Position numbers and translations under genes: made by a program | Origin: Trichoplax adhaerens | Taxonomy: Eukaryota > Animalia > Placozoa | Assembly (NCBI RefSeq): GCF_000150275.1 | Contig: NW_002060946.1 | Location: 220,678 to 284,677 of the forward strand | Direction of reading: 5' to 3' | DNA: 64,000 bases | Notes under the pieces: generated by a model | Database searches by the model: none | The model's input: only the letters and a program-made list of their open reading frames with translations | What the model was told of the DNA's origin: nothing | Shown: piece after piece, positions 1 to 41,216 of the stretch | Layout: the number at the start of each line of letters is the position of its first letter | How positions within the stretch are numbered: the first letter of the stretch is position 1

Positions 1-345
1 TTAGACAGTTTATACAAAATATAAATAGATTGATTTTAAGTATTACAGTAAGCTAGTGACTCATAAACTACTCGATAGTTTGTATAAAGCATGCATATGG
101 CAAATTGATTTTTAGACTCTATTAACTACGAACTAGTACGAAGCTACGCTTATTTCTAATTAATATTTAGATTCTACTTTCTGTCAGCTGTAATGAACTA
201 TTGGATAGTTGATACAAAATATAAGCAGATTGATTTTACGTATTAAGTAAGCTAGAGATTTGTAAACTACTCAATAGCTTATATAAAGTATGCATACGGG
301 TAGATTGATTTTTAGACTCTATTGACTACGAACTAGTCCGAATTA
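1..345. repeat. Direct duplication, ~200-bp period (intronic), built from shorter degenerate subunits
   Basis: Near-identical blocks start at 1 and 201 (..tacaaaatataa..agattgatttta..; ..ttgatttttagactctatt.actacgaactagt). Confidence 0.85.
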
Positions 346-630
346 GTTAAAAGTTTAAACCATTTCTATCGACATATACGCGTGAAGAGGAAGAAAGATT
401 AACTTCATATTCTACTTTCCGCATGATGCGACAATTTCTATATAAGTATGAACAGATTGACTTCCTTACTCTACTTTCTGTTGGTCAGTATGGCTAATTT
501 AAAACTAGTAGGCAGTTTATCTACAAAAGACAGGAATAGATTCATTTTGATCTACAGTCCAGTAATTGACCTGAAGTGCAAATAGCGAATAATACTAATG
601 CACATGATTTGTGATATATATGTACGACAG

Positions 631-3600
631 ATCACTGGGATGCTAGCAATCAGGGTTCGCCGTTTTTAGCACTATTACTAGCCAATACAGAAATTCCTAT
701 GGAAAGTTGTTTAGCAGAAGCCGATATTTGCTTGGTTCGTTATGGCACTGACAAGAAACTAATTCTAGCACCTTATAGTAATAGCTTGGATGAGAGTCCT
801 CGAGACAAGAAGCGTTATCAAAGTCTAGTTTGTGAACTAGATGATTACCAATCCTTCGAAGAACAAGCGTGCTATTACTTGCAACGTTATCGTGGTGAAA
901 ATAAATTCAACTTAATTGAAATAGAATGGCCGCTACCTTCTTTAAAGGTGCATTAACAACATGCAAAGTAATAAGTTTCGTGCGACTATTATAGCTTAAA
1001 ATTTTATCTCACATCTTATCGCGCAATATTAATTATCATTACATTACTCTAAATTAGACCCTAGAACATATTGGTAAGCAACAAAACTTGTATAACGAGA
1101 TAGAATAGATACTATATCAGCATCGCTCTCACAACGTTAGATAATCATCAACAACATAAACAAAAAAATATTTAGTATGTGATTTTATCACAACTTAGAA
1201 TCTAACTTCAAATCTATACAGTAGCATGCGTTATTTCCATATTGCTTTAAATCTCAATTTTAAAACTAGAGCAGGAAAATAAAATTTTTTACGATAATAT
1301 AGGATATTCATCAGCATTACACATTAAAAAACGAAAAATTACCTACAATAATTTCTGCCGATTGTCAATTTTATTGTAGGACTCTTGCCAAATCGTCAAC
1401 ATTAATGGATTCGCGTATAATGGAGAAACGAAAAGCTCGATTCTAGATTGGTTACAATCCTCTATCCTTCGAATTCATATTGTCCGAGACATTGCCAGAC
1501 TAAATCATGAGGTATTGTGCTTGCAAATCTATTGCAAATCTACTGTTTCCTTAAGTAATTCATTTCGTTTGCCACAAAGAAATCTATTAAACAGTCGTTT
1601 AACCTCCAATTTATATCAGTACATGGTTCTAATGCTTTATGTACAATAATTTATAAAATGGCTGGTTCACTTATAAAATTAGTGATAATTTTATAAAGTA
1701 GTTTATTACTTTGAACAATTATTGTTTTAGTAGACTTGATCTACCATATATAAAGAGAGAGAAATTTAATTTGCATGCTGTAATAGCCTTTTTCCTTCTA
1801 TAGATGAGCCAGTTAACACAAGGTTTCCATTCAATCGGTGATATGAAAACATTAGCGCTTTGGTCTAATTCATCTGTATTCGTTTATAATATCGACACGG
1901 AAAATGATACTAATTCTTGCCTAGACGATAAAAAGATTACATCCATATTACAAAATATTTGGCCGGAATGGAAAACCATACCAATTTATTCCATTAATAT
2001 TCATCAAGAAAAGACTAATATAATTCACCATCAATTGACGGATATTTTTTATCAAGTATTGCATCAGTTCAAGAAAACTATCCAAGATCACTGTAAGCTA
2101 CAATTGGAAATCTATTACAGGTAATATCACAACTATTGCTATGATTTTACATCATTATATTCATCTAACACGAACATAAATACTGGTAGAGTGTATTAAT
2201 TGTTGTTTTGTTTTTTACAAGATGGCTACAGAAATTGTTGAACTATGCCGAATTCGCTGATCATTTTCGTCAGTACTGTGAAAAATTGCCTCTTGAAGAG
2301 AGGAAGCTCCACCAAAGCCAATTACAAATTAAGCTCATTGATATCGCGCGCTTTCTACGTAAGATTCATGCTAAACGTGAACCAACAATGCTACCCGAAA
2401 CGGTTAAAATTAATACTCAAGATTTTCTACAATTACTAAACTTAAAATTACTACGACTCATCAATGAGACTAATTCAACTTTTCTCGATAAATATAGCTT
2501 ACTTTGCAATCAAACTGTAACTGATTTTCGAGATATTCTATCTATGGTCATAGATCAACTTGACTTGCAAGTAACACAGTTTGAAATTGAGAATAGATTA
2601 CTATTAGTAGCGAAACAAAACTATATCAAAGATTTACTATCATCTCATGACGAAAGTAAAGTATTAATTGATTATTTTGAAGGTTTAATGCTTGGTTTTA
2701 ATGATCTTCAAGACAACATTAGTTTGTTAACATTAAACAATTTCATTCCAAGCCAGTGCATCATTACGAATACTACAAGTAAAATTAATCTTTTCTTGAA
2801 TCATCCAATCCTGCTGAAAGCTAATTATCCAACAAGTTTAGGTTTATTTAATGCTCAACATCAGCATTTTATCCAAGTCTTACAAGAAAGTATGGATGGG
2901 CAACCTGCTTCCAATAGAATAAAAGTTTGTATTACTAAAGTTCTTCATCACTTCACTGATGATAACATTCAGCGAGAAATGATTAATCATGAACTTCGCC
3001 CGATCGGTTATCACTTTCATGAATGGTTGGAAGATTTCGTTAAGCTAACTGAATATTATGCTTGGTTAATACAAGAACAAGACTATTCTGCTACTAGCAA
3101 CCAAGGCAATCGAGACCATTTAATTACACCAAATGCCAATATTAAAAATTTGCAACGTTCTTTGGCCTATTGTTTCGTTCTATCGATTGAAAATGATGTT
3201 CATAGATATGGTCGAAATGATCTCGACACCATTGCTGTCGATACTGTTATTGGTACTGGTATTATTGGCCAATGCCATCATGGTACAGGTAGGATTGATC
3301 AATCAAATTCACAGCCACTATTAATCAAAAGATTATACGACGATATTAGCAAGGATAATGCCTTTGAGTATTTCATTGAAATCGACGCTTTAAGGTAAAT
3401 TAGAGAGAATGATTCTAAAATAATTAGATCATAGCTTGGCAAAGGTGAATGTTGAATCAATTTCTTCTACTAGCTGTGTATAGCTCAACTAGTATTTATT
3501 TCATTTTGCAGTTAGCGATTATTGTTGCCAAATTATGATAAATTATGCAACACATTCTCTAGTTTCGGTTTTTCGTTAATCAACACAGTCAAAAATGGTC

Positions 3601-5457
3601 AATAGTGCTTGAACATCGCGACTAAAATATAGAATGGCATCGTATTCACCTGTTAACAGATACAGAAATATATTGTTCACACTTATTTTGGTGCTTCTCC
3701 ACCATCGTTGAACAATTGCAAACAGTCTAAATAAAGTATTTATCTGGTGCAACTAAATACTAATACTTCTCCGTACATTCTGCAGCAATAAATATTTAAA
3801 TGGCGTCAATAAATTGGATTTAGATATCACGACCAAACTAGATAGCAATATTCCTTCGTAGTCTTAAATTTTGACCTACTGCTAAATTTTATAATTGGAA
3901 ATAGTTCTAGCAATGCCATAGTTCTACGCTGCTAAGATTAATCGGCATTCTCAGCATACACATTTTGAGCATTTTACCACGGAATTATTAAATATTGATC
4001 GCTTTTATCTTGAATATTATGCTACACATATTTCAAAATATGCACCTTTCAGCATTAGAAAGATTTTAGTAGATATTAGAAAGGTGATGAGGGAAAATAA
4101 ATTTCATACACTCTTTTGCGTAGTTAACCCGATATTTATGGTATCTCATTTCAGCAAGTTAAAGTCTTAAGATTCATTAAAAATTCATTGTTATTTTATT
4201 ACTCTAATCAGTATAAAAATCTATTTCTGTGCTAATCTTTTACGTTCTTTCTATACCGTATATTTAGAAAATTGAAACATAAAAATATCATCCAATATTA
4301 TGGAAGTATTCGTCGATATGGCATTAAATTACAAATCGATATGCTCCTAGAAAGTTGTCGAAATAATTTGAGATTTCTTTTGGAAAGCAATCATCAATTA
4401 ATACCGTCCCATTTCACGATCACGGGCTATCCTAAATATCGGGCCCGCCTCTTATTTTTTAATTTAGCAAGTCAAATTATTAATGGTTTACAATTTCTAC
4501 ATCGTAACGGATACCTCCATCGAGACTTGAAGCTCGATAATGTGTTGGTGAGTGGTTATAGTCCTACAGGCAAATATTCCGTTGCATACTTTACTTATTA
4601 TAATTTAGATCATCATACATATTATCCGTTAAAGTTATAGTCTCTGATCTCATATCTACGCCTAATTTCATCTGACATATATCTATCTAGCTGTCAGGAT
4701 AAATTATATAGTGAGAGTGTCTGTTGGACAGGGCAACAATGAAAGTTTTAGATTTCTACTTAATTTACGCCACTTGTTACGCTCAGATAGTCAAAAGTAT
4801 TCTTATGTCACATCTAAGGCATAAATCTGTCATGTTAGCAGATATAAAAATTCGTATTCTTTAGCTTTAGCTCGATATGACATCAAAGGATAATTATATT
4901 TTTCGTTTAGAGCACAAAAAGTATTAGTAACCCGTATTTTTTTATCCTATGGTAACTTTTAGATTAACGAAGATTTCATCGTCAAGTTAACTGAAATTGG
5001 CCAAGCAAATTTAGCTAAAACAACGGCTAGCAATGTTATCAGTAACAGTATTATTTATAGCGCGCCAGAAATATTTAAAAAGCAATTCATTAATCACAAA
5101 GCCGATATTTATAGCTTTAGCTTAATGCTATGGGAAATGTGGTATGGCAAGAGGGCATTCAATCAAGATTTCGAGATCAAATTTATCCTTAATGGTCATA
5201 GACCATCGATGGATGCTGAATGCCAACCTGAAACCCATTTAAAAGACTTGATCCAATCCTGTTGGGATAATAATCCAAAATGTAGGCCATCAAGCGAAAA
5301 ATGCTTTCGTATTTTGCGTGGCTGTTTTGAAGAGCTTGCCATGCTAGAAACTGATGACTTATTACCACAGTTAAGGGGGCGTAAAATCAGTCGATCCATC
5401 GGATATACACCTAAAAAAATATCAACTTCAAATGAAAGTATTATTTACAGAGTATAG
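631..5457 (+). CDS. Dynamin-like (degenerate GTPase) domain + helical region + C-terminal protein kinase-like domain (DSTYK-like), probable pseudokinase; 5'-truncated by the window
   Basis: GT-AG exons 631-947, 1380-1511, 1804-2120, 2222-3394, 4268-4547 and 4963-5457 join in frame (~904 aa). Kinase motifs: IGTGIIG, LLIK, alphaC Glu, HRDLKLDN, KLTEIG (in place of DFG), YSAPE, ADIYSF, LWEMWYG, CW..NP..RP. The N-terminal part has dynamin-like signatures (CLVRYG, IEIEWPLPSLK, SVFVYN). The first exon opens in phase 1, so an upstream exon lies outside the window. Confidence 0.85.
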
Positions 5458-5740
5458 GATCAAATAATGTTGGCTAGAAATTGATGGCATATAGCTATAG
5501 TTATGAGAGCGTAAAATCAATCAACCTGACAGATACATCTTTAAAAATATTTATTTTAATTGAGGATAATATCAATGAAGCTTGAAAATCAAAATAGGTT
5601 GGCTAGAAGCACACTGCCTAGGTCGAGATATCCTAAAAATTCATCGACCTGATGGATAAACGCCTAAAAAATATTCATCTCTGTTGAAGATAGTATTCTA
5701 TGAGCAGAGCTTAAAAATAAATTTACTGGCTAGAAATGTA
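5343..5740. repeat. Degenerate ~130-bp tandem repeat x3 overlapping the kinase gene C-terminus and 3'UTR
   Basis: gctagaa recurs at ~5343, 5473, 5602 and 5728, with taaaa.t..tc.ac...gata..c.taaaaa in each unit. Confidence 0.7.
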
Positions 5741-6629
5741 ACAGTTGAATCTATTTTATTTATTACTTTTTGAGTATAGAATCAAAGTTTTATTATATAC
5801 GTAGTCAATCATAGACAGTAGCCAGTTGAGGAAAATGTCTATAAAGTAGTTACTAATAGTGTTTTTAAGATTAGAATGCGTCTTTTGTATATTATGATTT
5901 TGTAAGCTATTTGAGAAATATTTCTAGAAGACCGGGTTACGCTATATATAATCTCATATTCTATGCCTGGAATAACCAATTCAATTTAGGTCAAATCGTA
6001 ATTTTAGTTGCAATCATTCAAGGTATCCAAATACTTTAAGAAAATGTCATATTCTGATGCTATATCGAGATTTTTAATGGAATTGTATTCTGATATAAAA
6101 CAGAAATAAATATCTAACGATAATAATGTATTTTAACTATGAAATAGTATAATCAGGCACTATAAATGACGGGAGATGTTTTGCGTAAATTTTGGTGAAC
6201 AAATTGAAATAATTTGAATAGAGAATAGTCAAAAGTAACAACTTTAATTTAACAATTAATTAAAGTCTCATGTTACTGGGTCTAGCCAAAAATTCGTAAT
6301 AATAAAAATTCTTAGTACCTATGAATATCCGTATCTGCCACTGCAACAGACGTATGAAGCGTGAAGCAAATTATTCTAATTCGCTTTGATTTACTGTGAG
6401 ATAAAGTGCGAATTTGCATTGCATATTTAAATGACAGATATTAGTATTAACTTTATACTCAGAAATTGTATTATTTGAACCGGATAAAATCCTAATTAAT
6501 AAAAAGTTATAAAATTTATGATCGTACATTACTAAACAATTACAATCATGTACAATATTAATTAAATAATCGATAATGAAGTTAAGGTTTCATTTATATC
6601 AAAGAAATGACAACATCGTATTTATGACA

Positions 6630-6980
6630 GAATGTACTTTATCCTGATGACACAATCCTATTTAAATTATTAAATAAGGATAAGCATACATAATATTAAT
6701 TATAAGACTAGTTTAATTAATATTAAAGCTAGAATATAATTTTTTGTCAAAGAATTTCGGTCATTCTTAAATAATCGATTTTAAGGTTACTATTTCATTC
6801 GTGCCAAAGAAATTACGATATCGCACTCATGGCAAAATGTGCTATACCTGGATGATACCATCCTATTTTTAATTATTAATGAATAAGGATAAGCGTGTAG
6901 AATATTAATTATATGACTTGCTAAATTAATATCGGAGCTAGTATTGAATTGTTGGCAAAAAATTTTAATGTCATTCTGAT
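6630..6980. repeat. Direct duplication, ~205-bp period, between the convergent kinase genes
   Basis: atcctattt..aattatta..aataaggataagc..aatattaattata.gact..aattaatat..agctag..gtcattct occurs twice. Confidence 0.8.
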
Positions 6981-7386
6981 TTAAAGTACTATTGTAGATC
7001 CTTACAGGGCTATTAAACCTGCTTCGATTTTTAAATCTTGATTCTTGTGATCACGCTTCAATAAAATTTTTATTATCATTTTATGAGAATATTTTGGTAG
7101 TATTCAGTATCGTAGCTGACACATGAATATTTCAGCTACAGTAAAGAATAAGAATACTCTAAATTATATCAACAAATAGATCTTTAAAGATGTCCAGGAG
7201 ATTGAATTACTTGGCGGTATTCAATCGCTGCTATATAACTTGTTCACTTATAGGTCGTTAAAAAAACTAGTATCTTGATGATAATAATTCAATTTATTTC
7301 GGCAGTGTTAAATGATTAATAGATGAAGATATGAGACAGTAGGGAAAATTCCAATAAGAAAAGTATCCATTTCCAAATTTTCCTAA

Positions 7387-10300
7387 CTAGCAGATGATTG
7401 GAGAGGTCGTTTCTTCGGGATCTTCATAATCGCTACGATATTGTAATGCTTTATAGCATTCACTAGACGATAACCGCTCATTAGGATCAAATTGAAGGCA
7501 TTTAGTAATGATGTATTGCCATAAATCAGGAGGTGGAGGATAAATACTAAAATCGGGATTAACACCTTGAAGTAGCTTGTCTACAGTATCTTTCGATAGA
7601 CTAGCCGAATTGGATAAGTCTATCAATGGTTTGTTGTACCACATTTCATGTAGTATTAAGCCATAATGGTACATATCGCATTTATGGTTATATACGTTAC
7701 CAGCTAAATATTCTGGAGCTGGATAGATTGGTAGTTGACTATTCTTGATCGAATCGATAGATGCAGATTGAAAAACTACGCTTGGATCACATAACTTGAT
7801 AGTGTTATCGATGCTTAGCTATTAAGCAAAGTGAGCAGATTTGAGTACAAATAGTTATGAACTAAATATCCAAGATTAACTAATTCAATATCACAAACAA
7901 ATAGTACTCATATTTATTATACGTATTTGTATCGTTTGCTATGCAATTCTGCCAATCCAATTCATATTTTACGTAAATATCTAGATTAGTAGACTAGGCT
8001 TTTATAAAATTAACTAGCGATTAACAAGATACAGTATGAAATAACAAGCTTAATTAGGAATAGGTCATTACTATACTACTATTAAAAAATTAGCTAGACT
8101 AATTTACACTTTGCTATACAAAAGTAGATAAGCTTCAATCATCTTTCTGATTAAAATAAATATTACTGTATTTCCAAATAGGATCTATAACAAGTCAGTA
8201 ATGGTACTTACTTAAAAATTACATTCTTTGATAACTTACTAAATTAGATTAGTAGACTACGATTTTCAGTAAGATATGATGTAAGAAACTAAGCTTGATT
8301 AGGAACTGGTCATTGCTATACTGCTGTCAAAAACAAGCTGGACTAATTTAAAAATTGATATCAAATGGAATAGGAGATAAATTTTAATCATCTTCTGATC
8401 GATAAAAATGTTACTGTATTTCCATTAATCCCAGATAAAATTCTCCAAATAGGATCTATAACAAGTCAATAGTAATATTTACTTGATAAATATATTCTCG
8501 GATTACTTACCAGAATATTATCCAAGTACAGATCCGGATGGACATAGCACGCATTATGGATATAGCACAAACCAGCTGCTATTTGTAATGCAAAAATTTT
8601 AATTTTCCTGTAGGCACATTGTTGTTTATTATATCGGAAGGGAAAATCTGCAGGGATGCAATCATTTTGGAAATCGAAGAATTTCTTCAACGAACAGTGA
8701 CAAATCTCACAAGCCATCGTAAAGTTGTTGACACGATCTTCCAATGATACAAGGCCATAAAATGTTAAAATATTTTTATGATTTAGCTTTCTAAAAAATG
8801 TTAAAAATATGTCATTTGTCGATAAATTAGCCATATGATTTTTTTAGATTTGGAGGCTGTAGCAATAAAAAATCTCTCCAATTTTTTTTTATTTATTAAA
8901 GGTACTTTTGACAATAGAATATAATTTAATCACTTTATTAGATATACATCTTTCTACTTCGCTCTAGGCTAGCTTAATAATGCTAGGAAACATTTATAAC
9001 TTGTAAAATTGGATTAAAAATAGGCAATTCAATTTTAAATTACTCGATTCAGCTCTAAAGTTATTGATTCAATATTATCCTAAGCTTACCGTAAAGCTTC
9101 TTCTTCACTTAATAGTTTAATAATATTTCTGCTTGATACCTTGCGATTAAATATCTTCAATGTTATAGGCAGGAACTGAACATCCTTATTCCGTAATTGA
9201 CAAGTAGAATAAGCAGCTGTAGAATTATGATCAAATGAATAATTTTCATCATAACCAACTAATTGATTAGGATTGAATTCAGCTTGTCGTACATATCTGA
9301 CATTAAATAGCATGACAAGCCTTGATAGATGCTGATTGATTGTTAGTAATTGATTGGATGAATCATTTCCGTTAGGAACATTTTCGGTATGATTATCATC
9401 CGATAGTATATGCTGAAGTAAGTTGCGATAGAATTGGAATAACGTTGGTAAAATACTGAAATAATTATCAAACGAATCAATGACAGGTTTCATCATCATA
9501 GTCATAGCCTCAATAACTTTAGATCGCTGGAACGAATCTTCCATAATGGAGATAACTTTAGCCTTGAACCATACTATTAATTTTTCTTTAATCAATTTTT
9601 CACTATCAAAATGTTGACAATAATTGGCTATAATTTCATTGACTTCATCATCATCTATTTCTTCTATTGACTGAATTAAATTGGTGGAAAAACGGCTAGG
9701 TACCCATAATGGAGATATTAGATCAAAGATAACCTTCTCTTGAGTCGTATATTGATCATCATAGAGAAATTTGTTTTCGTCATAATCCTGTAAGATATCT
9801 AAATTACATAATGAGCCTCGTTCAAAATTCTCTAGTAAAGATTGCATACGAAATAATTTCTTCTTGTACTGTTGGATTAAGTAATAGCCTAATTGATTGA
9901 AGTAATCTTGTATATCTTCCCTTCCTATAATGATCGATGTCATTGTGGTCTTGGCAAGCTGAATTAACTCATGATACGTTATATTTTCGTCACTTGTAAT
10001 CTTGTCTGTTAACGATTCTTGTAGTATATAAGTAATATCATCGTCAGATTGAATAAATTTCCAAAGGTCACGTAAAACTTCTTCTTGTCGAAATACTATA
10101 TTAGTGTTTAATTGCCTTATTATATCGTCTTTGCTGGTCATCATCTCAATGTTATTTAATCGAGCTTGTAGTTCACTAGCAATTAACTTCCTTGATTCCA
10201 ATGATTTCCTGCTCATGACATACTGAAAGTGGTAATTATACGAAATTCTACTCAACAGATATTGTAGCCATCTAAAAGGAGAAAAAAATATTATACCATC

Positions 10301-12671
10301 AGATAATACGATGACAAGAAGAGTTTGTTACTGTACATAGATTATAAGTACTAATAATTAAGTATTTATATATATATATATATGAGTAGAGTATGTTAAT
10401 TGCAGTTTAAAGATATTTGAAATATTTTAAGCCACAGTAATTTAGAGCGATTTCTAATATAAGTGATGATTGATGCATATTAACTTTAATCTGATTAACA
10501 TTATAGAAATAAAATGTATCCATCATCGTACGCGATACATTTAACTAGTCAAGATAGAATATCTAATGTTACGGCCGCATCGATAACTATTTGATGGAGA
10601 TTACTGAGTAATATTATATACTGTACTTACATATCAGTCTTTATTAAATAGTAGCAATACTTAATGGGAAGTCTCATATCCAATGATTATCTCACTTAAT
10701 CATAGGCAATAGGTATATTATACAAAAAGCATCATTAATGGTATAAGACGTTTAATTCTACGTAGAGTTATATACGATATTATGCATATCTTGGTATATT
10801 ATGCATAAATCAACATAGTTTTCTTATGATTTTGGGGTATGCGATATAGCTAATATTTGATCTTATATTATCGTGGCATTTTTATGTTGTCAAGTGTAAG
10901 ATGTTGTATTAGGTAATAATGTAATGGCATGGCAATATGGTATCTGCACGAAGCCTACTCAATATTCTAAAAATAGGATAACAAAATAAATGACTAGGTA
11001 CCCTATGGCATCTAGAATTATTATTATGATGGTGTGGCAATACTGTATGTGCATGAAATCTATCCAATTTTCTACTAAGACCATAACAAAATAAATGACT
11101 AGCTTCCCTATGGCATCTAGAAATATTATTATGAAGATCTGGCAATGTTGTATTTGTACGAAAACGACTCAATTTCCCACTAATAGCATAACAAAATAAA
11201 TGACTAGATTCCATGTGGAATCTAGAAACATTATTACGATGGTCTAGCAATAATGTATATGCACAAAAATGACTCAATTTCCTACTGATAGCATAGCAAA
11301 ATGAATAACTAGGCTCCTTATAGCATCTAAAGATATTATTAATATTAACCGGTGACGACATACCTACTGAAAAGCTCAAGTTTATACGTTAAATTATACG
11401 GAAGAAAGACTTGTAGTTGCATTATAATATCGTGATATTCTTGGCTGACAATTCCCAGATGATAATCTTGTACAGCATTAGTTATATTAACCACTAGAAA
11501 TTGTTGTAATGAACAATTAGGCCAATAATGATCCATTTTTTGATAGAAGCAATCTTTTTTAGCTTTTATATCATGTCCCTCCAAACCTTCTGCCTTAGTG
11601 TTACATATAAATATAGTTGAATCAGGTAAAAAGTATCCTAGTGTTGCTTTCTCTCGATGCCATACTTGCTGTAGGATTTTATTGACCTATTTTAAAAGAG
11701 AAATAGTATTATTAATAATTAGTATATCCTATCTTCAATGCCATTTTATAACCATCAAATAGCATTCCAATATCATGATTTTAGAATACTTTTGTTATGT
11801 CCACGATTATATTTTGATCAATTTGTAGCACAAAAATGACACCGAAAGCATTAGAAAGGCACTTTATAAAGAGATCGGAAACGACAGGTAAACTAATGGA
11901 CCAGGGAAATGAAACATATTGAATACCACGCTTTAATGCATCTATCGGCCAATAAATTTTAATAATAGCAATATCCTTTTCATATTTTGTCATATATTGA
12001 TCAATTTGTTGAAGAAACCTTTCATCGTCGTCATCTTCATTGTCTAAAAAGATATTGGTGGCTGTAGTTTCAACTTCTTTTTCGATCCATCGCTCGATTT
12101 GTACATATCTTTCAGAATTATAACTTAGTAAATAACAAAATCTGCGGTCATAAATTTGATTCAGTGCAGCACATTTGCAGTGGATTAATAATTCGATTAG
12201 ATCTTTCTTGCCTTGACAATCATCGCCTACGATAAGTAATTTATTAATTAAATTGTATTTGCTTTTGGCATCTGAAGAGTGAATCAGTTTTGGCTAACAT
12301 TACAGTCATTACTTTAATTATACAAGCATCTCATATCAACAGTACAAATATTCACCTATAGAAGGGTACATGATGTTATCGATCACATTTATTAATTCAT
12401 TCCAGCAAAAATATTACGGCTATCAATTAAATCATGTCTACTTCTATAAGTTTAGTCAGAATAAATACTTACCAATAAGAAGTACAGGATGCTGATGATT
12501 TTGCAAAGAAGTAATATGCCCTTGTAGTATTGCACGATAATCGCCTAAATTTTCTAGTAGTTGTGTTTGCTCAAATTCACTCATTTTACTAATAAATTGA
12601 AGAGTTTGTTCGAATAATCCTTTAAGAAAAGTCTTCCTCTTTTCAAAATTATACAATAGCTGTTCCATCAT
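7387..12671 (-). CDS. Paralogous dynamin-like domain + helical region + pseudokinase (DSTYK-like), ~965 aa
   Basis: Exons (minus) 12671-12473, 12271-11790, 11686-11364, 10271-9090, 8790-8511 and 7818-7387 total 2898 nt in frame. P-loop-like LLIVGDDCQGKKDLI, IKIYWPIDALKRGIQYV, IFICN. Kinase: ITLK, EEEALRKLNHKNI, HPDLYLDN, KLCDPS, YPAPE, CDMYHYG, LHEMWY. Shares intron positions/phases and a 280-nt kinase exon with the 631-5457 gene. Confidence 0.85.
7981..8467. repeat. Intronic direct duplication, ~265-bp period
   Basis: tagattagtagacta at ~7982 and ~8245; ccaaataggatctataacaagtca at ~8175 and ~8445. Confidence 0.8.
10920..11340. repeat. Intronic 105-bp tandem repeat x4
   Basis: ata(a/g)caaaat.aat.actag at 10978, 11083, 11188 and 11293 (exact 105-bp spacing). 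Confidence 0.9.
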
Positions 12672-15841: not shown

Positions 15842-18344
<2,503 letters not shown>

Positions 18345-19247
18345 GACATGTGGCAGAATGAGAGGCCGCATCGTACAGTATGCTTGAGCACCGCTACTAC
18401 AGTACTTTGTTACAGTAATAAGTACTGTCGAAGTGTACTGTACACTGTACTAGTTGGAACACAGACACTACGGACGGAACTCTATAACCGTCACGTGTCA
18501 GTGGGGGTTTGCTTTCTATAGCCAATGTATTTACGGTAAAAGAATTTCAGTATATTCTATATTGTACAGTCTACAGCATGAACCACTGGACTGGGGTTTG
18601 TCTGCGTCAAATGATGTCACCCCTTGTAGCATCCTTTCTTTCAGTTTGTACTGTATATCGGAGTTAAGATAAGGTGTGATTGCCAGTTCTTTTACAGTAC
18701 ATAGTCTATTGCTACAGTACAAACCTAGCTAAGAGGTGACATTATTTCACGTACAGACTACTGTATACAGTACAGTACAGTAGTACGCAGTAGAATACCT
18801 TACACAGTACAGTGCAGTAGAGTGACAAGGGGCCCGGGGGGATACTGTACACTGTACTGTACAGTACAGAGGAGGTCAAGCGTCACCAACCGATCCAATC
18901 ATCCCCCCCCCCCTACTCTCAGAGTCCTCAGCGGGCTCTACCCCAGCCCCTGCTGGGCTGTCACAGTGTCCGGCCGTAAGCCTGAGGTAAAAGCTAGTCC
19001 AAGTGGATTACAGTAAACATACGCGTTCATCGACTAGATTAGATTATTAAGATTAAGTGGATGTAAGCCCAATCTGCTGCAGGCGGCCATCATACAATCA
19101 TTAATTAGAAGACGGCTATTAATTAAAGGTCATCTCTATCGATAGAAGACAGTCGTTGCCATTAAACTCACAATCTTGATTCTTACTATTGCGTTGAAGG
19201 ACAATTTCAACTAGTTTTGGCCTAATAAACATCGCTGTCGATCGATC
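18345..19247. promoter_or_regulatory. Putative bidirectional promoter GPATCH4/CETN3
   Basis: Divergent ATGs are ~900 bp apart; local GC elevation, G/C tracts and dense TACTGTAC/GTACAGTA motifs. Confidence 0.6.
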
Positions 19248-22200
19248 ATGTCGTTGCGTACTGATTACGCCTTAGATAAAGGCGGTAAGCGTCGTGGTAA
19301 AAGGCGCGAGTTAACTGAAGAGCAAAAACAAGAAATTAAAGAAGCTTTCGAATTATTTGATACCGACAAAGATCGAGCCATCGACTATCATGAATTAAAG
19401 GTAACTGTCCTCTTTTCAAGGTTTACAACTTTAGTTCCTGTGTACATGGTTAGTTGTGACTGGATTGGATAGCTTTTGTATGATCGTTAACGCGATCGTA
19501 GTCAGTTGATCTCGCGGTAATAGACGATCATGCAAAGCTTTGCATATTTTATCATGCAGTGAGACCAGCGCTCCTACGTCTTTCTCTCTCTTCTTTTTAG
19601 TATTCCCTGTAGACAACTTACCATTGTATTGTACATTGGAGACTCTAAAAAGATCTCTACAAGTATATTACGTTATCTAAATACGGTAAATGACAGTTAT
19701 GATGTATGATAGGATATTTTCCATACACTTACGATTGGACAAAAATCAGCCGACTGCGCCACTTCACGATACTGTACACTCGATGGCTCATCATAGATTA
19801 TAATACCATTAATCAATAATCCAGGATGGGATTATATAGGATAGAATCAGTTAAGCTAGCAAGATTGCAGTACTTTGATGCTTGAATCAAATGGGAAAAT
19901 TTGAAAGCGACAACGAATCATCAATAATTAACGGTATTCGCTTGTTTGAATTTAGGAAACAATTGACACCCTATTCTGTAAGTTGTGTACTCGGATTGTT
20001 GATAGCTTATAGCTCACTGGATGTCGCTGCTATAACATTTCACCGATCCAGATAGTAGTCAATTGGAAAAGGTGCCCGTATTCCAACACATAGTATATCG
20101 TAGAATGGTATTGATGAATTATTGTGATACTTGAATCTTGCCAACATGCAATGGTCATACAATATTGCGGCGATTGACTGTAATAAAGTAAATGATAAAA
20201 GTGAAAGTTCAAGACCAGTAAATTACACTGAATTCAATGTATATCGTTGACTATTTTAAAGCTGTCATGCTTTAGAGGACTACAATTGAAGAAACTTTTA
20301 AAATGTTCCATTCAAGAAAACATCGGATCCATTACTATCCATTCAAAATAACATTGTCACTAAAGTACGCATTATTGAACTCCTTGACTGACTGCTTTGA
20401 TATTCCGTTATGCCATCTTGTGAAGCATGCAAAGATGGATCTTAATACGGATGGTTTTACAATGAACTTACTACTTTAACACTATTGTAGTTAGTAATTT
20501 GGACAAATTTGTTTGGATAGGAACGCCATGCTCTAATCTAAAGACTAGTAGTCATAGGAATATTTATTGACACAATCATTTTATACAATCACTATAGCAA
20601 GGTCTCGTAATTGCTTTCAGGTATTCACTTATATTGAGCAACACTACTGTCCTGTATTATTATTATCGACGCTATAGATTCGCATAATACGTTCTAATGG
20701 GAATAGTTGGATTACTTTGAGTAATCATGGTACTAAATTAGTGTCGGTATCGCTTTTTCGATAGCTTCTAGCCTTCACATTGAATATCTATTACAAAACT
20801 CGTAATGATCCATGCATAGCGTTGTAGAATGCCTCTATAAGCGAATAATGGTGTGTATGCACTCTTATTTTCAATATTGACTTATGTATGTGTTTGGCAT
20901 TGAAAAAACGAACATACTGACATCCAACTGCAACATATTGACAGATTGACAAACGCCGTATTGATGATTTTTGACCCTTGAGTGTAAAATTCAATATGCC
21001 TACAATACTAGCTGTTAACGGCGTTGCCATTAGGCTAATCATGCTACTATACTATACCTGTACAAGTCATTACTGCAAGTGAACGATTCGTTTTATGGCA
21101 CAACATAAACCGTTGTATAAAATTTCTATTATTCTAATACTATGTAATGCTGCAATTGATTATAATTATATTATGATGCTTTTAAAGACTTATAGAATAT
21201 CTAGGAGGAGTATAATTAATTAATTAATAATGTAAATTCTTGATCGTTCGTAGAACATAGAATAGGTACAATTCAGTACTGTAAAGGATGAGTAATACAA
21301 TCAATTTACATGCTTATTATTATGATAGAGTCATTGCATCATTGGTGAAGGCATGCATGATACGACGTAGCAAATTAATAATTAATAGGGCGATTGTATT
21401 CTCTGCTTGAAGAATAAATTCATGTAATTCTAAAATACATCCACTTTTATTATAATGTACTCAGAATCACTCTATAGTATTGTCTTAAGTTATGTATCTG
21501 CACAACGGTACACATCTTAAGTTAACAACAAAGTGTATCTAGAGCTAATGTAATAATATTCACATGTCTCTTTGATAGGTAGCAATGAGAGCTTTGGGCT
21601 TTGACGTTAAGAAAGCAGATGTTTTAAAAGTTTTACGTGACTATGATCGTGAAGGCACAAATAAGATTACTTTTGAGGACTTTTTCGAAGTCAGTAAGTA
21701 ACCAACGGAATTATTATTGCTATACTCGTTGCGTTGTCGACGCATGGTCCAGTTTCAAGTATTCTGTCTTCGTTACATAGTACCAGGAAATAAATTTATT
21801 TGCATTTAATTTATACACGTATGATTGATTATAGTTACTATGCATTTTAAGAAAAATTCCCAACTATTCCGTACAGTATAATAATAGAAATAAATCGTAG
21901 TACGTTAGTATCGCTCTCATAATAGCAATTTAACTAATTAATGCTAGAATGGACACAAGAACAAAATCAATACTTGTTTAGAAATTTTTTATTAATACAG
22001 ATAATTAAGGAGACGATCCGATAGGAAAGTACTTTATCACTTGTATTTTCGATTAGTACTATTGAATTACTGAATTATTAATGAAATTATTTAATGGTAG
22101 AGTCCCTTTTAAAAATAGCGATTCATTCATAAAGTTGTACAGTTATTCACTGAAACTAGCAAGTACAAATTTAATGACTAATTTCTTGACATAGTTTGTA

Positions 22201-27200: not shown

Positions 27201-28820
27201 AGCTATAGACTGTGATATCCATTTTTACAGTACGATATTAACTATTCTTACTAAGTAAGGAGTACTTGCAATATGCTGTGTAGGAATATTTGAAACAAAA
27301 TCAAAGATGAAGTGTTAACTTGAAACTTTCAAGTCAAAAAGGGTCATGGGAGACAGTACAGTAATATGTTTTTGAAAGATATACAATCAGTTACGATATG
27401 GGCAAAATGAGGATTTGCTGGACAAGCAATTTATGTGCTTGCCCCTACGATAGTTGACTAACAACATCTTGATCATTATGACGATCGTTAGTGGCATGTA
27501 AAATTGTGTTGGAAATTGTAAATAAATCATGTCTTGATACTAGAAAATAAATAAAAAGTTCACTGATATTATGGATCAAGTTAAGACTAAGGATAAGCAC
27601 TAGTTACGATAGGCAATCTTCAGAATTAGTCATCAAAAATTGAATAGATAGTGGACATCATGGGCATGTTGTATTAGTCATTGGATCAAAACATGCAAAC
27701 CCCAACGGTGCACCGAGTCCTTTGCCATTGTGGTAGATATTCTTCTTTATAAGCAATAGCCAAGCGAGCAATGAAATAAAGACACTAGCACTGTCGATAA
27801 GATTCTATGGTCTACAGTAGAGTACAATACTTTGGACTAGTCCAAGTTTTCTTTTTCTCCATTCTATCGTCGTTCTTTCAACATGGATATACAGTCAAGT
27901 AATGGATAAGTTGTGATCCAGCAGGCTGGATGGTGATGACATCACGACTAATCAATCCTCCACCATTAGAGAGTAGGATAGCAATTAGCAGGGTAAGATT
28001 CCCTATCCACTGGGATAGAGAAAGACGGCAGACATCTCTAAATTACTAATATGTTTGCTCTATCACGACTACCATTGGACAAAGTTTAAAGTGGCAGATA
28101 GCCGCCCGCCTAGAGTGCTAAAATGATCGCCACAAGTTCTTATTCCATCCATTCAAGATGGTATGACAAAGTGTAAAAAAAAAAATGGGGTTGCTTCATC
28201 GATGGGAGCGATCCATCTGAATGAGGGATGTATGTATACAGTACTGTAGGATGGGCTACGTTTGGTAGTGCCTAGATGATGATGATGATCAACGACTATG
28301 CAAGTGATTCTGCTTACTAGGTGAAATTGATGCAGTCCAAGTGTGTGATGGGAAGCTTTGATGATCAAGTCTTGGAGATATGTCATCTTTTAGCACTATG
28401 GGAGTTGATGAAGGGAAAAATGGGCATGGGGAATCCTATCGTCCAAGCAATAACATACCAAAAAGTGCCTGGACATACGTACGTCTAGGCGTTTCCAGTA
28501 GACAAGAATATGGATAAAAAGACAATCATGACTATAAATGCATTTCTTGGACAAGGGTGGATGATAACAATTAGCCTGAATATCATCATCGTCTTCTTGT
28601 CCTTTCTATTTTGGAGTGTAACATGGCATCCATGTTATTGTAGCAGAGGCTATGACAAGGAAATACTAGCAAGTTGCGATCCTGCATAATACATACCAAT
28701 CGTTGAGATGAAAGTTGAATTGAAAGCGTCTTCGGAAAATCGGAATAATACACACGTCTTGCCCACGCCGCTATCACCAATTAATAGCAATTTGAATAGA
28801 TAGTCGTATGATTTAGCCAT
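24203..28820 (-). CDS. RAB8: Ras-related protein Rab8, 216 aa
   Basis: Exons 28820-28697, 25530-25470, 25127-25067, 24888-24721, 24637-24572, 24453-24403 and 24322-24203. [83 protein letters not shown]; C-terminal CaaX CTLL, as in Rab8. Confidence 0.96.
26609..26625. repeat. (GA)n microsatellite
   Basis: agagagagagagagaga in Rab8 intron 1. Confidence 0.8.
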
Positions 28821-29130
28821 GATACAATCTGTATCTGCTTTTTACTAGCCACTAAAGTATTGCTAAACTATCAAGAGAAGAATGATTGGAGTACTAAAAG
28901 AAGGTCCCAAAGTGAGTCCTTTCTTGGATGAGTAGAGAGCAAACACTGCTATGTCGTGGCTTGAATGTTGCACAATGAATGTTCACCGGGTAATATGGAA
29001 CGGGTGTCAACGATGCCCAACCACCTGGAGTATTAGGTTGACTATAGGACGAGGGTCGACGTAAGCGTAGTCTACCCTAACTTCATAGTCTGTCTACTTT
29101 CAGCCGTGGCCGTCTGGTCGATCCACCACT

Positions 29131-29478
29131 CAGTGTGGATCGACGCTTGGCCGGACCGGGTAGGGTACGACACTTCACTATTCAGTCCAGTACGCTGATA
29201 AGAAAAGATGGCATTGCCTGGTGTGAGTCACTACGGTACTCAACTGTAAGGGATTACGTAGTACTGTATACGTACGTGCAGTACTACGTCTACTACTCAG
29301 ATCAACAGCTCAGTGTGGATCGCCGCTTGGCCGGACCGGGCCAGGCACGAGTAGATCTTGGCTTGGCCGGACCGGGTAGGGTACGAGTGTACGACACTTC
29401 ATCGCACGGTCTGACTATTCAGTCCAGTAAGCTGATAAGAAAAGATGGCATTGCCTGGTGTGAGACAGTACGGTACTA
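29131..29478. repeat. GC-rich local duplication (~110-170 bp, 2 copies with an internal sub-duplication)
   Basis: cagtgtggatcg.cgcttggccggaccggg and actattcagtccagta.gctgataagaaaagatggcattgcctggtgtgag each occur twice. Confidence 0.9.
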
Positions 29479-29829
29479 AGACAGACTTTGCACTGTGACA
29501 CATCAGACAGATCTCTTCACAAATTACAGTACAGTATTGTACAGTACTGTAGAATGGGAACAATCAAAATACTGTACTGTACTGTACGGTGTACAGTACA
29601 CTGTACACCGTACAATAGTACATTGTACCCTATACCATGCACTGTACACTGTGCAGTCATCAAAATCTGATGGCAGTCGTTTTCACCCAGTGATGTCACC
29701 CAGCGGGGCGCGATGACCTGCCAATGTGTACAACAGCGGCAGCTCTTGACGTTGTATGGGTGACATTGATTTTGCTATGGATTTGCCCTATCAAGAGCAA
29801 GGTAAACTATTGTACTGTACTGTACATTA

Positions 29830-30240
29830 GGACATACGGTACTGTATCAGCGATCCTATAGACTACTGATCTTTTTCTGGTAGTTTATGCAATAATCAGG
29901 TATCATGTATCAGTAGGCCTCACATTGTTACAGTAGCTAGACATACTGTATCAGCGATCCTATGGACTTACTTATTTTTTTCTAGTAGTTTATGCAACAA
30001 TCACACCCTGGAATGGCAAGCAATTCAGGCCACAGTAGGGTAAAAAGACTCAGGTATCATGTATCAGTAGGCCTCATATTGCTACAGTAGCTAGACATAC
30101 TGTATCAGCGATCCTATGGACTACTGATCTTTTTCTAGTAGTTTATGCAATAATCACACCCTGGAATGGCAAGCAATTCAGGCCACAGTAGGGTAAAAAG
30201 ACTTAGGTATCATGTATCAGTAGGCCTCATATTGCTACAC
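29830..30240. repeat. 153-bp tandem repeat (~2.7 copies)
   Basis: aggtatcatgtatcagtaggcctca at ~29899, 30052 and 30205; tactgtatcagcgatcctat x3. Confidence 0.9.
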
Positions 30241-40121: not shown

Positions 40122-41216
40122 CTATCTTCGAGGTTCTACCCATGCTTCGACATGTCGCCGAGGACGAGATGGATTATTGACGGGAGCAGATACGGCTCTA
40201 CCTGGCCTGTTGATATTCCGATTTCGCCTACAGTAAAATGCTATTCGTAAGTTAGCCCACATAGCTTGTCGAAATCGAGGATTTTGAATACCATATAACA
40301 TTGGATTATATAATGATGTTAAACAAGTTACTAAAATGGTCATTAGAATAACAGTAAAAGTAGGAAAGTTAGTTTCTAGGTAGAGGGCGGTAAAATTTTT
40401 ACCGGTTATTCCCATGCTAAGCAAGACAACAAAGTAAGGCCAAGAAGCTAGCATAAATACAGCTGTTGCTATAATTAAGACACGCACTGCAGCATAACGT
40501 CGATCATCAAATAAAACCGTACTATGATATTCTTGATCAAGACGAGCTTGACGATTATATGTTGCTCTTATTTTGAATATGATTCTACCATATAAAGAGA
40601 CCATTAAAAATAATGGAATAACGTAAGAGATTAACGTTACGATAACAATCGTTACTGTAAAACTACGATAATATTTAAGATCTAAATCACAAATGTATGA
40701 AAAATTAGCCGAAACATCGGCAAAAAGGATAAAAGGCGCCGAGCACATAAGGCCTGATAGCCAAGTAAAAACAATCACTGACATTAATTTCCACCTTTCA
40801 TTAATTAAGGTAGAAACACGATTAGATATTATTACATAATAACGATCAATACAAATAACTGAGAGGGATTGCGTTGTTGTCACTAAGGATAACATTAATG
40901 GAAAGATAACTAATTTACATACTGTGGCTAAGGTACTGATGGAAGCAGCTTGAGACAAACATAACGCTTGAGCAATTGTGAACAGAATTTGGCATATACC
41001 GCATAACAAATCTGATACTGCCATATTGGCGATAAGTATAAAAGGTGCTGAGTGCATACGGCGTACACGATAAACAGTATAAATTACTAGTAGATTACTG
41101 CATACAACAGCTAATGCGTTGAAACATAGAAAACCGGATAATATTGTATAAGATTTAATTAATGGTTTAGTTGGAATGGGTGTACTTGTAACATTGGCCA
41201 GGCGAAAAAGATCCAT
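40122..41216 (-). CDS. Intronless class A (rhodopsin-like) GPCR, orphan/peptide-receptor-like
   Basis: Single ORF with 7 hydrophobic segments: SNLLVI, NMAVSDLL, C..IDRYY, TWLSG..P, YVIPL, WPYF, YNPMLY and helix 8 (NPRFR). First in-frame ATG at 41216. Confidence 0.93.
   Translation of the reverse strand: MDLFRLANVTSTPIPTKPLIKSYTILSGFLCFNALAVVCSNLLVIYTVYRVRRMHSAPFILIANMAVSDLLCGICQILFTIAQALCLSQAASISTLATVCKLVIFPLMLSLVTTTQSLSVICIDRYYVIISNRVSTLINERWKLMSVIVFTWLSGLMCSAPFILFADVSANFSYICDLDLKYYRSFTVTIVIVTLISYVIPLFLMVSLYGRIIFKIRATYNRQARLDQEYHSTVLFDDRRYAAVRVLIIATAVFMLASWPYFVVLLSMGITGKNFTALYLETNFPTFTVILMTILVTCLTSLYNPMLYGIQNPRFRQAMWANLRIAFYCRRNRNINRPGRAVSAPVNNPSRPRRHVEAWVEPRR

What the first reader, a model, noticed from the sequence alone, without database searches (positions are those of the whole stretch)
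631..12671. Tail-to-tail pair of dynamin-like pseudo-GTPase-pseudokinase genes: candidate two-component membrane/immune signalling module
Seen: two convergent paralogs of ~900-965 aa with the same layout (P-loop-type N-terminal domain, ~350 aa predicted helical region, C-terminal kinase fold). They share intron positions (R|WLQ, ALR|KL.H.NI, DN.L|) yet are very divergent in sequence, and both reading frames are intact. Established: bacterial dynamin-like proteins often work as adjacent gene pairs forming hetero-oligomers (e.g. DLP1/DLP2, IniA/IniC), some in anti-phage defence. Animal dynamin-superfamily GTPases (Mx, GBP) and pseudokinases (MLKL) act in cell-autonomous immunity. DSTYK-like proteins have a long N-terminus before the kinase. 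Inference: the pair may encode a heteromeric, catalytically impaired scaffold/sensor from a lineage-expanded family that I do not recognise as functionally described in early animals.
Basis: partly seen in the sequence, partly recalled or inferred. Interest (0 to 1): 0.8.

Follow-up and report, generated by a model that had tools for sequence, protein, structure and literature searches.

The report
Dead-GTPase dynamin–kinase fusion gene pair
Two neighbouring Trichoplax genes encode mitofusin/bacterial-dynamin-like proteins fused to a kinase; both have lost the GTP-binding and membrane-anchor motifs yet are conserved, which makes them the odd members of an undescribed 14-gene animal family whose other copies keep the GTPase and have a dead kinase or none.

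Summary
Gene A (+) starts about 1.9 kb before the window: 8 exons, 1030 codons. Gene B (-) has 6 exons and 965 codons. All 12 introns are GT-AG and in phase.

Both genes belong to a family with a Dynamin_N domain, a BDLP-like stalk and paddle, and an RIPK-like kinase. It occurs in amphioxus, hemichordates, corals, bivalves, Lingula and a nemertean. I found no paper describing it.

Trichoplax has 14 paralogs in two clusters. Only A and B have lost G1, G3, G4 and the hydrophobic paddle, and only they keep the kinase beta3 lysine. A alone keeps HRDLKLDN, with DFG changed to EIG. Every GTPase-intact paralog has a dead kinase or none.

Orthologs in other placozoan data give dN/dS of about 0.1, so these are not decaying copies. 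B looks like a true double pseudoenzyme. A may be an atypical active kinase.

The "two-component A-B module" idea has no specific support. My favoured, unproven reading is a division of labour with the GTPase-competent paralogs.

The scan had already noted this family elsewhere in this genome (gene V and the C1412 cluster). The link to DSTYK could not be tested.

The parts
631..947 (+). Gene A exon 3, first half of the G domain. It starts in phase 1 inside the codon that is the first P-loop Gly in the paralogs; here that codon is GAT (Asp). The P-loop equivalent reads D-HWDASNQGSP, with no GK[ST]. Exons 1 and 2 lie upstream of the window at C1411:218827-218997 and 219768-219975.
   Evidence: Splice sites. 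Mapping of TRIADDRAFT_55131. Family profile built without A, positions 141-230, E 1.1e-4. Intron/codon comparison.
1380..1511 (+). Gene A exon 4, holding the G3 position. It reads IVNINGFAY where the family has IVDSPGIGE, so DxxG is lost.
1804..2120 (+). Gene A exon 5, end of the G domain. The G4 position reads FVYN-ID where the family has FVCNKWD, so NKxD is lost. The exon ends in phase 2 at R|WLQ.
2222..3394 (+). Gene A exon 6. It encodes the helical stalk, the non-hydrophobic remnant of the paddle, and the kinase N-lobe: Gly-loop GTGIIGQ, beta3 Lys in LLIK at about 3327-3329, and alphaC Glu.
   Evidence: The ortholog fragment is 65% identical and keeps these motifs.
4268..4547 (+). Gene A exon 7, from the kinase hinge to the catalytic loop. 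HRDLKLDN is intact at about 4518-4541.
   Evidence: Pfam Pkinase 7.8e-13. Family profile E 2.4e-25. Ortholog 74% identical with HRDLRLDN.
4963..5457 (+). Gene A exon 8, the kinase C-lobe through the stop codon. DFG is replaced by EIG at 4993-5001. APE is intact.
12473..12671 (-). Gene B exon 1, with ATG at 12671. It corresponds to family profile positions 67-134. The roughly 60-aa N-terminal exon present in A, U and the family was not found for B.
   Evidence: E 8.4e-5.
11790..12271 (-). Gene B exon 2, first two thirds of the G domain. The P-loop equivalent is D-AKSKYNL, with the first Gly codon again GAT. The G3 position reads YVSFPWSIS. The GDDCQGKK stretch is a chance P-loop look-alike after helix alpha1.
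   Evidence: Family profile E 1.9e-7. No Pfam Dynamin_N hit.
11364..11686 (-). Gene B exon 3, end of the G domain. The G4 position reads FICNTKA, so the Asp of NKxD is lost.
   Evidence: E 1.4e-9. The ortholog reads FICNTKI.
9090..10271 (-). Gene B exon 4. It encodes the stalk, the paddle remnant (SPLWVPSRFSTNLIQSIEEIDDD, not hydrophobic) and the kinase N-lobe. The Gly-loop is lost (NSTAAYS). The beta3 Lys (ITLK) and alphaC Glu are kept.
   Evidence: Ortholog 63% identical, open frame, pN 0.21 and pS 0.69.
8511..8790 (-). Gene B exon 5, from the kinase hinge to the catalytic loop. It reads HPDLYLDN at about 8540-8517.
   Evidence: Ortholog 73% identical, reading HPDLQLDY, so the catalytic Asn is not conserved.
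7387..7818 (-). Gene B exon 6, the kinase C-lobe through the stop codon. DFG is replaced by DPS at 7788-7780. APE is intact.
   Evidence: The ortholog reads DPC.

Best explanation
SHOWN (confidence about 0.9). A and B are two functional, conserved, probably sister paralogs in Trichoplax adhaerens. They belong to a metazoan family in which a mitofusin/BDLP-type dynamin is fused to a C-terminal RIPK/TKL-like kinase. The dynamin part has a G domain, helical neck and trunk, and a hydrophobic paddle.

Within the 14-member Trichoplax family, A and B alone have lost G1, G3, G4 and the paddle, while keeping more of the kinase catalytic core than any other copy. A keeps all of it except DFG changed to EIG. 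B keeps the beta3 Lys, the catalytic Asp and the DFG Asp, but lacks the Gly-loop. The other 12 copies keep an intact GTPase and paddle and have a dead kinase or no kinase.

INFERRED (about 0.4). The ancestral bifunctional protein has been subfunctionalised. A and B no longer bind GTP or insert into membranes. They act as soluble kinase or ATP-binding output and scaffold subunits. A is a possible atypical active kinase and B a double pseudoenzyme. They work in trans, through the retained stalk and G-like surface, with the membrane-anchored, GTPase-competent but kinase-dead paralogs (U, V, K1-K4, D1-D6). GTP-driven assembly on a membrane would thus be coupled to phosphorylation by a different polypeptide. 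The cellular role is most likely organelle or pathogen-membrane surveillance, but this is only circumstantial.
For: Identity:
- Relatives carry Dynamin_N (E 1e-13 to 1e-25) plus Pkinase.
- The exons of A and B map collinearly onto the family profile.
- The Atlas model of A is nearest to the mollusc dynamin-kinase cluster (TM 0.58) and to bacterial dynamins.

Reciprocal pattern:
- The motif table covers all 14 paralogs.
- Paddle hydropathy is 0.60 (A) and 0.84 (B), against 1.4-2.7 in eight other paralogs. K2 scored -0.29, which is probably a misalignment.
- Among 126 fully scorable full-length relatives from other animals plus A, 90 have both activities intact, 30 have an intact GTPase with a dead kinase, and only 3 have a dead GTPase, A included.

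Functionality:
- All 12 introns are GT-AG and in phase.
- For B against its ortholog, pN is 0.205, pS 0.70, dN/dS about 0.12, with no stop in 736 codons and the degenerate motifs conserved.
- For A's kinase part against its ortholog, dN/dS is about 0.11, and GTGIFG, the Lys, HRD and EIG are conserved.

Sister status: tree support is 90/80, and both genes share the Gly-to-Asp (GAT) change in the intron-split P-loop codon.
Against: - No interaction, expression or localisation data were available.
- Dynamin G-G dimerisation depends on nucleotide, and A and B lack nucleotide motifs.
- A's stalk is extremely diverged. Its branch length is 3.1, and only its last third is seen by the family profile. 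That argues against a conserved assembly interface.
- The A+B+V grouping may owe something to long-branch attraction.
- A's DFG Asp-to-Glu change may abolish catalysis. B's ortholog has lost the catalytic Asn. Possibly neither protein phosphorylates anything.
- In the only A ortholog contig, the 290 nt upstream of the conserved part carry in-frame stops.
Confidence: 0.4

Rival explanations
1. Stand-alone DSTYK-like proteins. A and B each work alone, or as homo-oligomers, as a kinase or pseudokinase. The fossil dynamin region serves only as an intramolecular scaffold or regulatory module. There is no functional tie to each other or to the GTPase-competent paralogs, and adjacency merely reflects tandem duplication.
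For: - Convergent genes share no promoter.
- Sister paralogs arising by local duplication explain the adjacency.
- A's stalk is too diverged to suggest a shared interface.
- DSTYK is a membrane-associated RIPK-family kinase that acts through its own kinase activity (PMC11933320).
Against: It does not explain why loss of the GTPase and paddle coincides exactly with retention of the kinase core in a genome where every other paralog shows the reverse. Homology to DSTYK could not be tested.
Confidence: 0.3
2. A and B form an exclusive heteromer, a two-component catalytically impaired sensor or scaffold. One version has B as the pseudokinase that allosterically activates its sister kinase A, as KSR does for RAF or HER3 for EGFR.
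For: - They are the only two GTPase-dead, paddle-less copies, they are adjacent, and they are probably sisters.
- Their kinase defects are complementary in kind. A lacks the DFG Asp. B lacks the Gly-loop and the catalytic-loop Lys.
- Bacterial DLP pairs are among the structural matches (5OWV/5OXF).
Against: - There is no direct evidence.
- Complementary defects cannot be pooled across two separate active sites.
- Bacterial DLP pairs are co-oriented operon partners with working GTPases, unlike A and B.
- The recurring pairing in this genome is head-to-head between kinase-less and kinase-bearing copies, not tail-to-tail.
- No trace of A was found downstream of B in the B-ortholog contig, although only 890 bp were available.
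Confidence: 0.15
3. Decaying duplicates. A and/or B are young or old pseudogenes whose motif losses reflect relaxed selection.
For: - All nucleotide-binding motifs are lost.
- A has a very long branch.
- No full-length A ortholog was retrieved.
- There are in-frame stops in the 5' 290 nt of the A-ortholog contig.
Against: - The reading frames of 1030 and 965 codons are intact in a 31% GC genome, where about 8% of random codons are stops.
- All splice sites are canonical.
- dN/dS is about 0.1 against orthologs, with the degenerate motifs themselves conserved.
Confidence: 0.03

Closest known systems
Bacterial dynamin-like protein BDLP (Nostoc, 2J68/2J69) and mitofusins MFN1/MFN2/Fzo1
   Different: A and B lack G1, G3, G4 and the hydrophobic paddle, and they carry a C-terminal protein kinase. 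Pfam Dynamin_N does not detect them.
[quoted passage not shown]
   Same: Similar size (about 930 aa) and layout: a long non-kinase N-terminus before an RIPK-like kinase. NCBI auto-names several family members 'DSTYK-like'. RIPK1 is the best structural match of A's kinase. DSTYK sits on late-endosome membranes and phosphorylates STING (PMC11933320). From memory only, DSTYK's N-terminus carries a degenerate P-loop-like stretch resembling the family consensus.
   Different: No DSTYK sequence could be obtained through the tools, so homology of the N-termini is untested. DSTYK clusters did not appear among the nearest Atlas structures for the N-terminal parts. DSTYK is reported to be an active kinase with a normal DFG.
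ROCO proteins (LRRK2 type): a GTPase and a kinase in one polypeptide
   Same: The same logic of a G domain coupled in cis to a TKL-type kinase. Pseudo-variants of either module are known in such families.
   Different: The G domain here is dynamin/mitofusin type with a stalk and paddle, not Roc-COR. There are no LRR, ankyrin or WD40 repeats.
Paired bacterial dynamins (Campylobacter DLP1/DLP2, 5OWV; IniA/IniC)
   Same: They are structural relatives, they are adjacent paralogs, and they are known to hetero-oligomerise.
   Different: Those pairs are co-oriented operon genes with working GTPases and no kinase. A and B are convergent eukaryotic genes with dead G domains.
Pseudoenzyme partners of active paralogs (KSR-RAF, HER3-EGFR, JAK JH2-JH1) and dynamin-related pseudoenzymes
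   Same: B is a conserved protein whose catalytic motifs are lost in both modules. A and B are sister paralogs. A DRP-like pseudoenzyme has been described in mitochondria (bioRxiv 10.1101/2023.10.03.560745, listed, not read).
   Different: No evidence of an A-B interaction. Two pseudo-domains in one chain is unusual.

Membership tests
Dynamin superfamily, mitofusin/BDLP clade | Dynamin-type G-domain fold followed by helical bundles | tested here: met
Dynamin superfamily, mitofusin/BDLP clade | Match to Pfam Dynamin_N (PF00350) | tested here: not met
   No hit for any A or B exon or for P0001. Paralog U hits at 1.1e-9 and relatives at 1e-13 to 1e-25.
Dynamin superfamily, mitofusin/BDLP clade | GTP-binding motifs G1 (GxxxxGK[ST]), G3 (DxxG) and G4 ([NT]KxD) | tested here: not met
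   A reads DHWDASNQGSP / NING / YN-ID. B reads DAKSKYNL / SFPW / NTKA. All three motifs were read intact in ten of the other twelve paralogs. In V only G1 and G4 were read, and in the fragment D4 only G1, which has Ile at the Ser/Thr position.
Dynamin superfamily, mitofusin/BDLP clade | Hydrophobic paddle or TM segment for membrane insertion | tested here: not met
   The maximum 19-residue Kyte-Doolittle mean is 0.60 (A) and 0.84 (B), against 1.4-2.7 in U, V, K1, K3, K4, D1 and D5.
Eukaryotic protein kinase superfamily (TKL/RIPK-like) | Pkinase / PK_Tyr_Ser-Thr fold | tested here: met
Eukaryotic protein kinase superfamily (TKL/RIPK-like) | Complete catalytic motif set (Gly-loop, beta3 Lys, alphaC Glu, HRD Asp, catalytic Asn, DFG Asp) | tested here: inconclusive
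   A has all of them except the DFG Asp, which is Glu (EIG) and is conserved in the ortholog. B lacks the Gly-loop and the catalytic-loop Arg and Lys, and its ortholog lacks the Asn. Activity cannot be read from sequence.
Metazoan dynamin-kinase fusion family (unnamed; 'uncharacterized protein' in amphioxus, corals, bivalves and others) | Collinear Dynamin_N, stalk, paddle and kinase architecture with shared intron positions | tested here: met
   The profile search returned 66 relatives, with the architecture confirmed. A and B exons map in order onto profile positions 8-986 and 67-988. Intron phases are shared among A, B, U and V.
DSTYK (RIPK5) orthology group | Kinase-domain orthology and a homologous N-terminal region | not testable with these tools
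   No DSTYK sequence was returned by any search. The only links are automatic 'DSTYK-like' names for relatives and my memory of the sequence.
Bacterial DLP1/DLP2-type hetero-oligomeric pair | Two adjacent, co-transcribed paralogs with active GTPases that co-assemble | tested here: not met
   A and B are convergent, with 1.9 kb between their stop codons, and both G domains are dead. Co-assembly is not testable here.

The most novel reading that the evidence does not exclude
In placozoans an ancestral bifunctional membrane-remodelling GTPase-kinase has been split among paralogs. Twelve copies are membrane-anchored GTP switches with dead or absent kinases. One soluble copy, A, supplies the only kinase activity, with its sister double-pseudoenzyme B as its regulator. 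Together they form a trans-acting dynamin-kinase signalling machine for organelle or pathogen-membrane surveillance. Vertebrate DSTYK would then be the lone surviving GTPase-dead member of the same family, which would reveal its unexplained N-terminus as a fossil bacterial-type dynamin.
Probability: 0.15. Interest if true: 0.85.

Novelty: new variant of a known kind. Interest (0 to 1): 0.62.

Why it matters
Fusions of a dynamin to a kinase are present in many marine invertebrate genomes and are strongly expanded in amphioxus, corals, bivalves and placozoans. That pattern is typical of innate-immunity genes. I found no paper that describes them.

Trichoplax offers a natural dissection of the family. 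No single paralog keeps both activities. A and B are the only copies that dropped the GTPase and membrane anchor while conserving the kinase core. This makes a clear hypothesis directly testable: that GTP-driven membrane assembly and phosphorylation are coupled in trans.

If DSTYK proves to be a relative, it would also give a structural and evolutionary explanation for the uncharacterised 650-residue N-terminus of a human disease gene.

Tried and rejected
- Pfam on every N-terminal and stalk exon of A and B gave nothing usable. Identity had to come from paralog U, the family profile and structure.
- The word-based homolog search with A's big exon found nothing. An ortholog fragment, P0020, turned up only by re-screening the hits.
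- I tried to reach true DSTYK three ways: a search with the N-terminal 730 residues of an amphioxus member, a search with the kinase domain of a 'DSTYK-like' member, and a PDB profile search. None returned a DSTYK sequence. The Atlas searches showed no DSTYK cluster. Peng et al. 2006 is not held.
- Seven literature searches found no description of the family or of TRIADDRAFT_55131.
- I first took GDDCQGKK in B as the P-loop. I rejected this once the conserved phase-1 intron fixed the register.
- A short ORF at 423-494 resembling B's N-terminus looks like chance (E 0.2).
- No first exon was found for B up to 17.5 kb.
- Contigs L031 and L033 did not help. L031 is too short, and L033 comes from an unrelated 43% GC animal.
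- I did not use the second structure job.


Full report
**Source and setting**

The window is C1411:220678-284677 of a 105.6-Mb, 1414-contig, roughly 31% GC assembly. The database protein that maps onto gene A is TRIADDRAFT_55131 / XP_002111302 of Trichoplax adhaerens, so the organism is a placozoan. Nothing here is human.

**Gene models**

Six-frame reading plus a family profile placed every exon.

- Gene A (+ strand) has eight exons. Two lie upstream of the window, at C1411:218827-218997 and 219768-219975. The other six are at 631-947, 1380-1511, 1804-2120, 2222-3394, 4268-4547 and 4963-5457.
- Every junction in gene A is GT-AG. Exon lengths and phases add up to 3093 nt, or 1030 codons.
- The JGI model (942 aa) skips most of the kinase N-lobe and the hinge, and it adds a doubtful 3' exon.
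- Gene B (- strand) has six exons: 12671-12473, 12271-11790, 11686-11364, 10271-9090, 8790-8511 and 7818-7387. All junctions are GT-AG, and the total is 2898 nt, or 965 aa.
- B has no counterpart of the first roughly 60-aa exon.
A fourth shared intron, phase 1, splits the codon of the first P-loop glycine in U and V. In both A and B that codon is GAT, Asp.

I checked frame continuity by exon arithmetic only. Searches were done exon by exon by reference, and whole-protein steps used the database protein P0001. Gene B was therefore never folded or searched as a whole. That step is left out.

**What the proteins are**

- Pfam sees only the kinase in A and B.
- The upstream paralog U has a textbook dynamin G domain, with GESGAGKSS, DTPG and THKD. 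Its Dynamin_N hit is E 1.1e-9.
- A profile of the three big exons, searched against 1.84 billion representative proteins, found 66 relatives.
- The full-length relatives come from Branchiostoma, Ptychodera, Tubulanus and Mytilus. Further searches added Saccoglossus, Glandiceps, many corals, many bivalves and Lingula.
- The full-length relatives tested carry Dynamin_N (1e-13 to 1e-25) and Pkinase.
- With A left out of the profile, A's exons still map in order onto positions 8-986. The fit is weak in the G domain and stalk (E 1e-4 to 0.06) and strong in the kinase (1e-25 and 1e-31). B's exons map to positions 67-988 at 8e-5 to 4e-24.
- An AlphaFold model of P0001 (mean pLDDT 57) matches BDLP at Foldseek E 2.4e-11. 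It also matches Cj-DLP1/2, IniA, MFN1/2, SynDLP and EHD4.
- The Atlas's own models of P0001 and of a hemichordate relative agree with this.
- The large 'helical' exon also encodes the kinase Gly-loop, beta3 strand and alphaC helix.

**The family in this genome**

Exon-wise searches of the assembly found four fusion genes on C1411 and a second cluster on C1412 at 8.205-8.29 Mb.

- On C1411 the genes are V at about 138.5-144.4 kb, then U, A and B.
- The C1412 cluster has four kinase-bearing copies (K1-K4) and five or six kinase-less copies (D1-D6). They are often arranged head-to-head.

Reading the motif columns of the profile alignment gives a sharp pattern:

| Paralogs | G1 / G3 / G4 | Kinase |
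|---|---|---|
| U, K1-K4, D1-D3, D5, D6 | all three read intact (U has THKD at G4) | dead, or absent in the D copies |
| V, D4 | incompletely read: V shows G1 and G4 (NKMD); the fragment D4 shows only G1, with Ile at the Ser/Thr position | dead (V); no kinase exons found (D4) |
| A, B | all three lost | most of the core kept |

- U, V and K1-K4 all lack the beta3 Lys (it is N, R or Q) and the HRD Asp (YKN, HCH, HAH).
- A has GTGIIG, the Lys, the alphaC Glu, HRDLKLDN and APE, and only DFG is changed, to EIG.
- B has the Lys, HPD...N and DPS, but no Gly-loop.
- The paddle is hydrophobic in U, V, K1, K3, K4, D1 and D5, with a maximum 19-residue hydropathy of 1.4-2.7. It is not hydrophobic in A (0.60) or B (0.84).
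- Among 126 fully scorable full-length relatives fetched, 90 have both modules intact, 30 have an intact GTPase and a dead kinase, and only 3 have a dead GTPase. A is one of those three. The sample is not random.

**Are the genes alive?**

- A contig from another placozoan (L030) carries B exons 3-6 at 55-73% identity with no stop in 736 codons. pN is 0.205 and pS 0.70 (saturated), so dN/dS is about 0.12.
- B's degenerate motifs are themselves conserved in that ortholog: NTK, HPD and DP[SC]. The catalytic Asn, however, is Tyr there, which marks B as a true pseudokinase.
- For A, a 2.4-kb contig (L032) carries the N-lobe part of exon 6, exon 7 and the start of exon 8 at 65-87% identity. GTGIFG, the Lys, HRDLRLDN and EIG are conserved, and dN/dS is about 0.11.
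- The first 290 nt of L032 have stops in all frames. This could be an extra intron, an assembly fault, or decay of the stalk in that lineage. It is unresolved.
- A sits on a very long branch (3.1 substitutions per site) yet keeps a 391-codon open exon in a genome where about 8% of random codons are stops. That argues for fast evolution under coding constraint, not for decay (and the composition).

**Relationships**

A maximum-likelihood tree of the big exon groups A with B and B's ortholog at 90/80 support, with V next at 87/88. A and V are long branches, so the grouping is provisional. The shared Gly-to-Asp change in the intron-split P-loop codon independently suggests a single loss of the GTPase in the A-B ancestor.

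**Interpretation**

Three things are shown:
- the identity of the proteins;
- the reciprocal motif pattern across the paralogs;
- purifying selection on both genes.

The rest is inferred. The family has been subfunctionalised in Trichoplax. Because dynamins work as oligomers, a kinase-retaining, GTP-independent, paddle-less subunit could be recruited in trans by GTPase-competent, membrane-anchored, kinase-dead paralogs. I put this at about 0.4.

| Reading | My odds |
|---|---|
| Trans division of labour with the GTPase-competent paralogs | about 0.4 |
| Stand-alone, DSTYK-like action | 0.3 |
| Decaying duplicates | about 0.03 |

An immune or surveillance role is suggested only by three indirect points: the expansion pattern in amphioxus, corals, bivalves and placozoans; the tandem clusters; and the report that DSTYK phosphorylates STING on late endosomes (PMC11933320).

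**Comparison with known systems and limits**

- The fold and the domain order up to the paddle are those of BDLP and mitofusin. The GTPase-plus-kinase logic recalls ROCO proteins, but the G domain is of another class.
- DSTYK is the closest characterised protein by automatic naming and overall layout. I could not obtain a DSTYK sequence from any tool, so membership is untested. My recollection of a degenerate P-loop-like stretch in DSTYK is only a lead.
- Expression, interaction and localisation were not testable here.
- The scan has already flagged this family on other DNA of the same genome: gene V, with a follow-up calling it a dynamin-like GTPase fused to a dead kinase, and the C1412 head-to-head cluster. 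My own searches reproduce both.

Noticed in passing
window 1-342: Intron 2 of gene A holds a tandem duplication with a period of about 200 nt. Positions 1-145 match 201-342 at 83-91% identity.
   Followed up: partly
window 423-494 (+): A short ORF beginning MMRQFLYKYEQ, inside intron 2 of gene A, resembles the start of gene B (MMEQLLYNFEK). The tblastn E-value is only 0.2, so it is probably chance or a relic of the duplication.
   Followed up: partly
window 2222-5457 versus protein TRIADDRAFT_55131: The public gene model for A jumps from the middle of the kinase Gly-loop region to the alphaE helix. It omits the beta3 Lys, alphaC and the hinge, and it adds a 3' exon at 5597-5656. The corrected model has 1030 codons and a complete kinase domain.
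   Followed up: yes
window 40122-41231 (-): A single-exon 369-aa ORF encodes a rhodopsin-family GPCR (Pfam 7tm_1, E 2.6e-29).
   Followed up: partly
G000:C1412:8205000-8290000 (L021-L029): A second cluster holds about ten family members. Kinase-less, strongly hydrophobic-paddle copies on the - strand alternate with kinase-bearing (dead-kinase) copies on the + strand. Three divergent head-to-head pairs are present: D1/K1, D4/K3 and D6/K4. D4 is a fragment with stops.
   Followed up: partly
L032:1-294: In the only contig carrying an ortholog of gene A, the stretch upstream of the conserved kinase N-lobe has stop codons in all three frames. In T. adhaerens the same exon is open for 391 codons.
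   Followed up: partly
L030:2579-2857: The ortholog of gene B reads HPDLQLDY where T. adhaerens has HPDLYLDN. The catalytic-loop Asn is therefore not conserved between placozoan lineages.
   Followed up: yes
window 18000-20000, 28000-30000 and 48000-50000: These are islands of higher GC (0.38-0.43, against about 0.31 for the rest), presumably exon-rich genes. I did not examine them.
   Followed up: no
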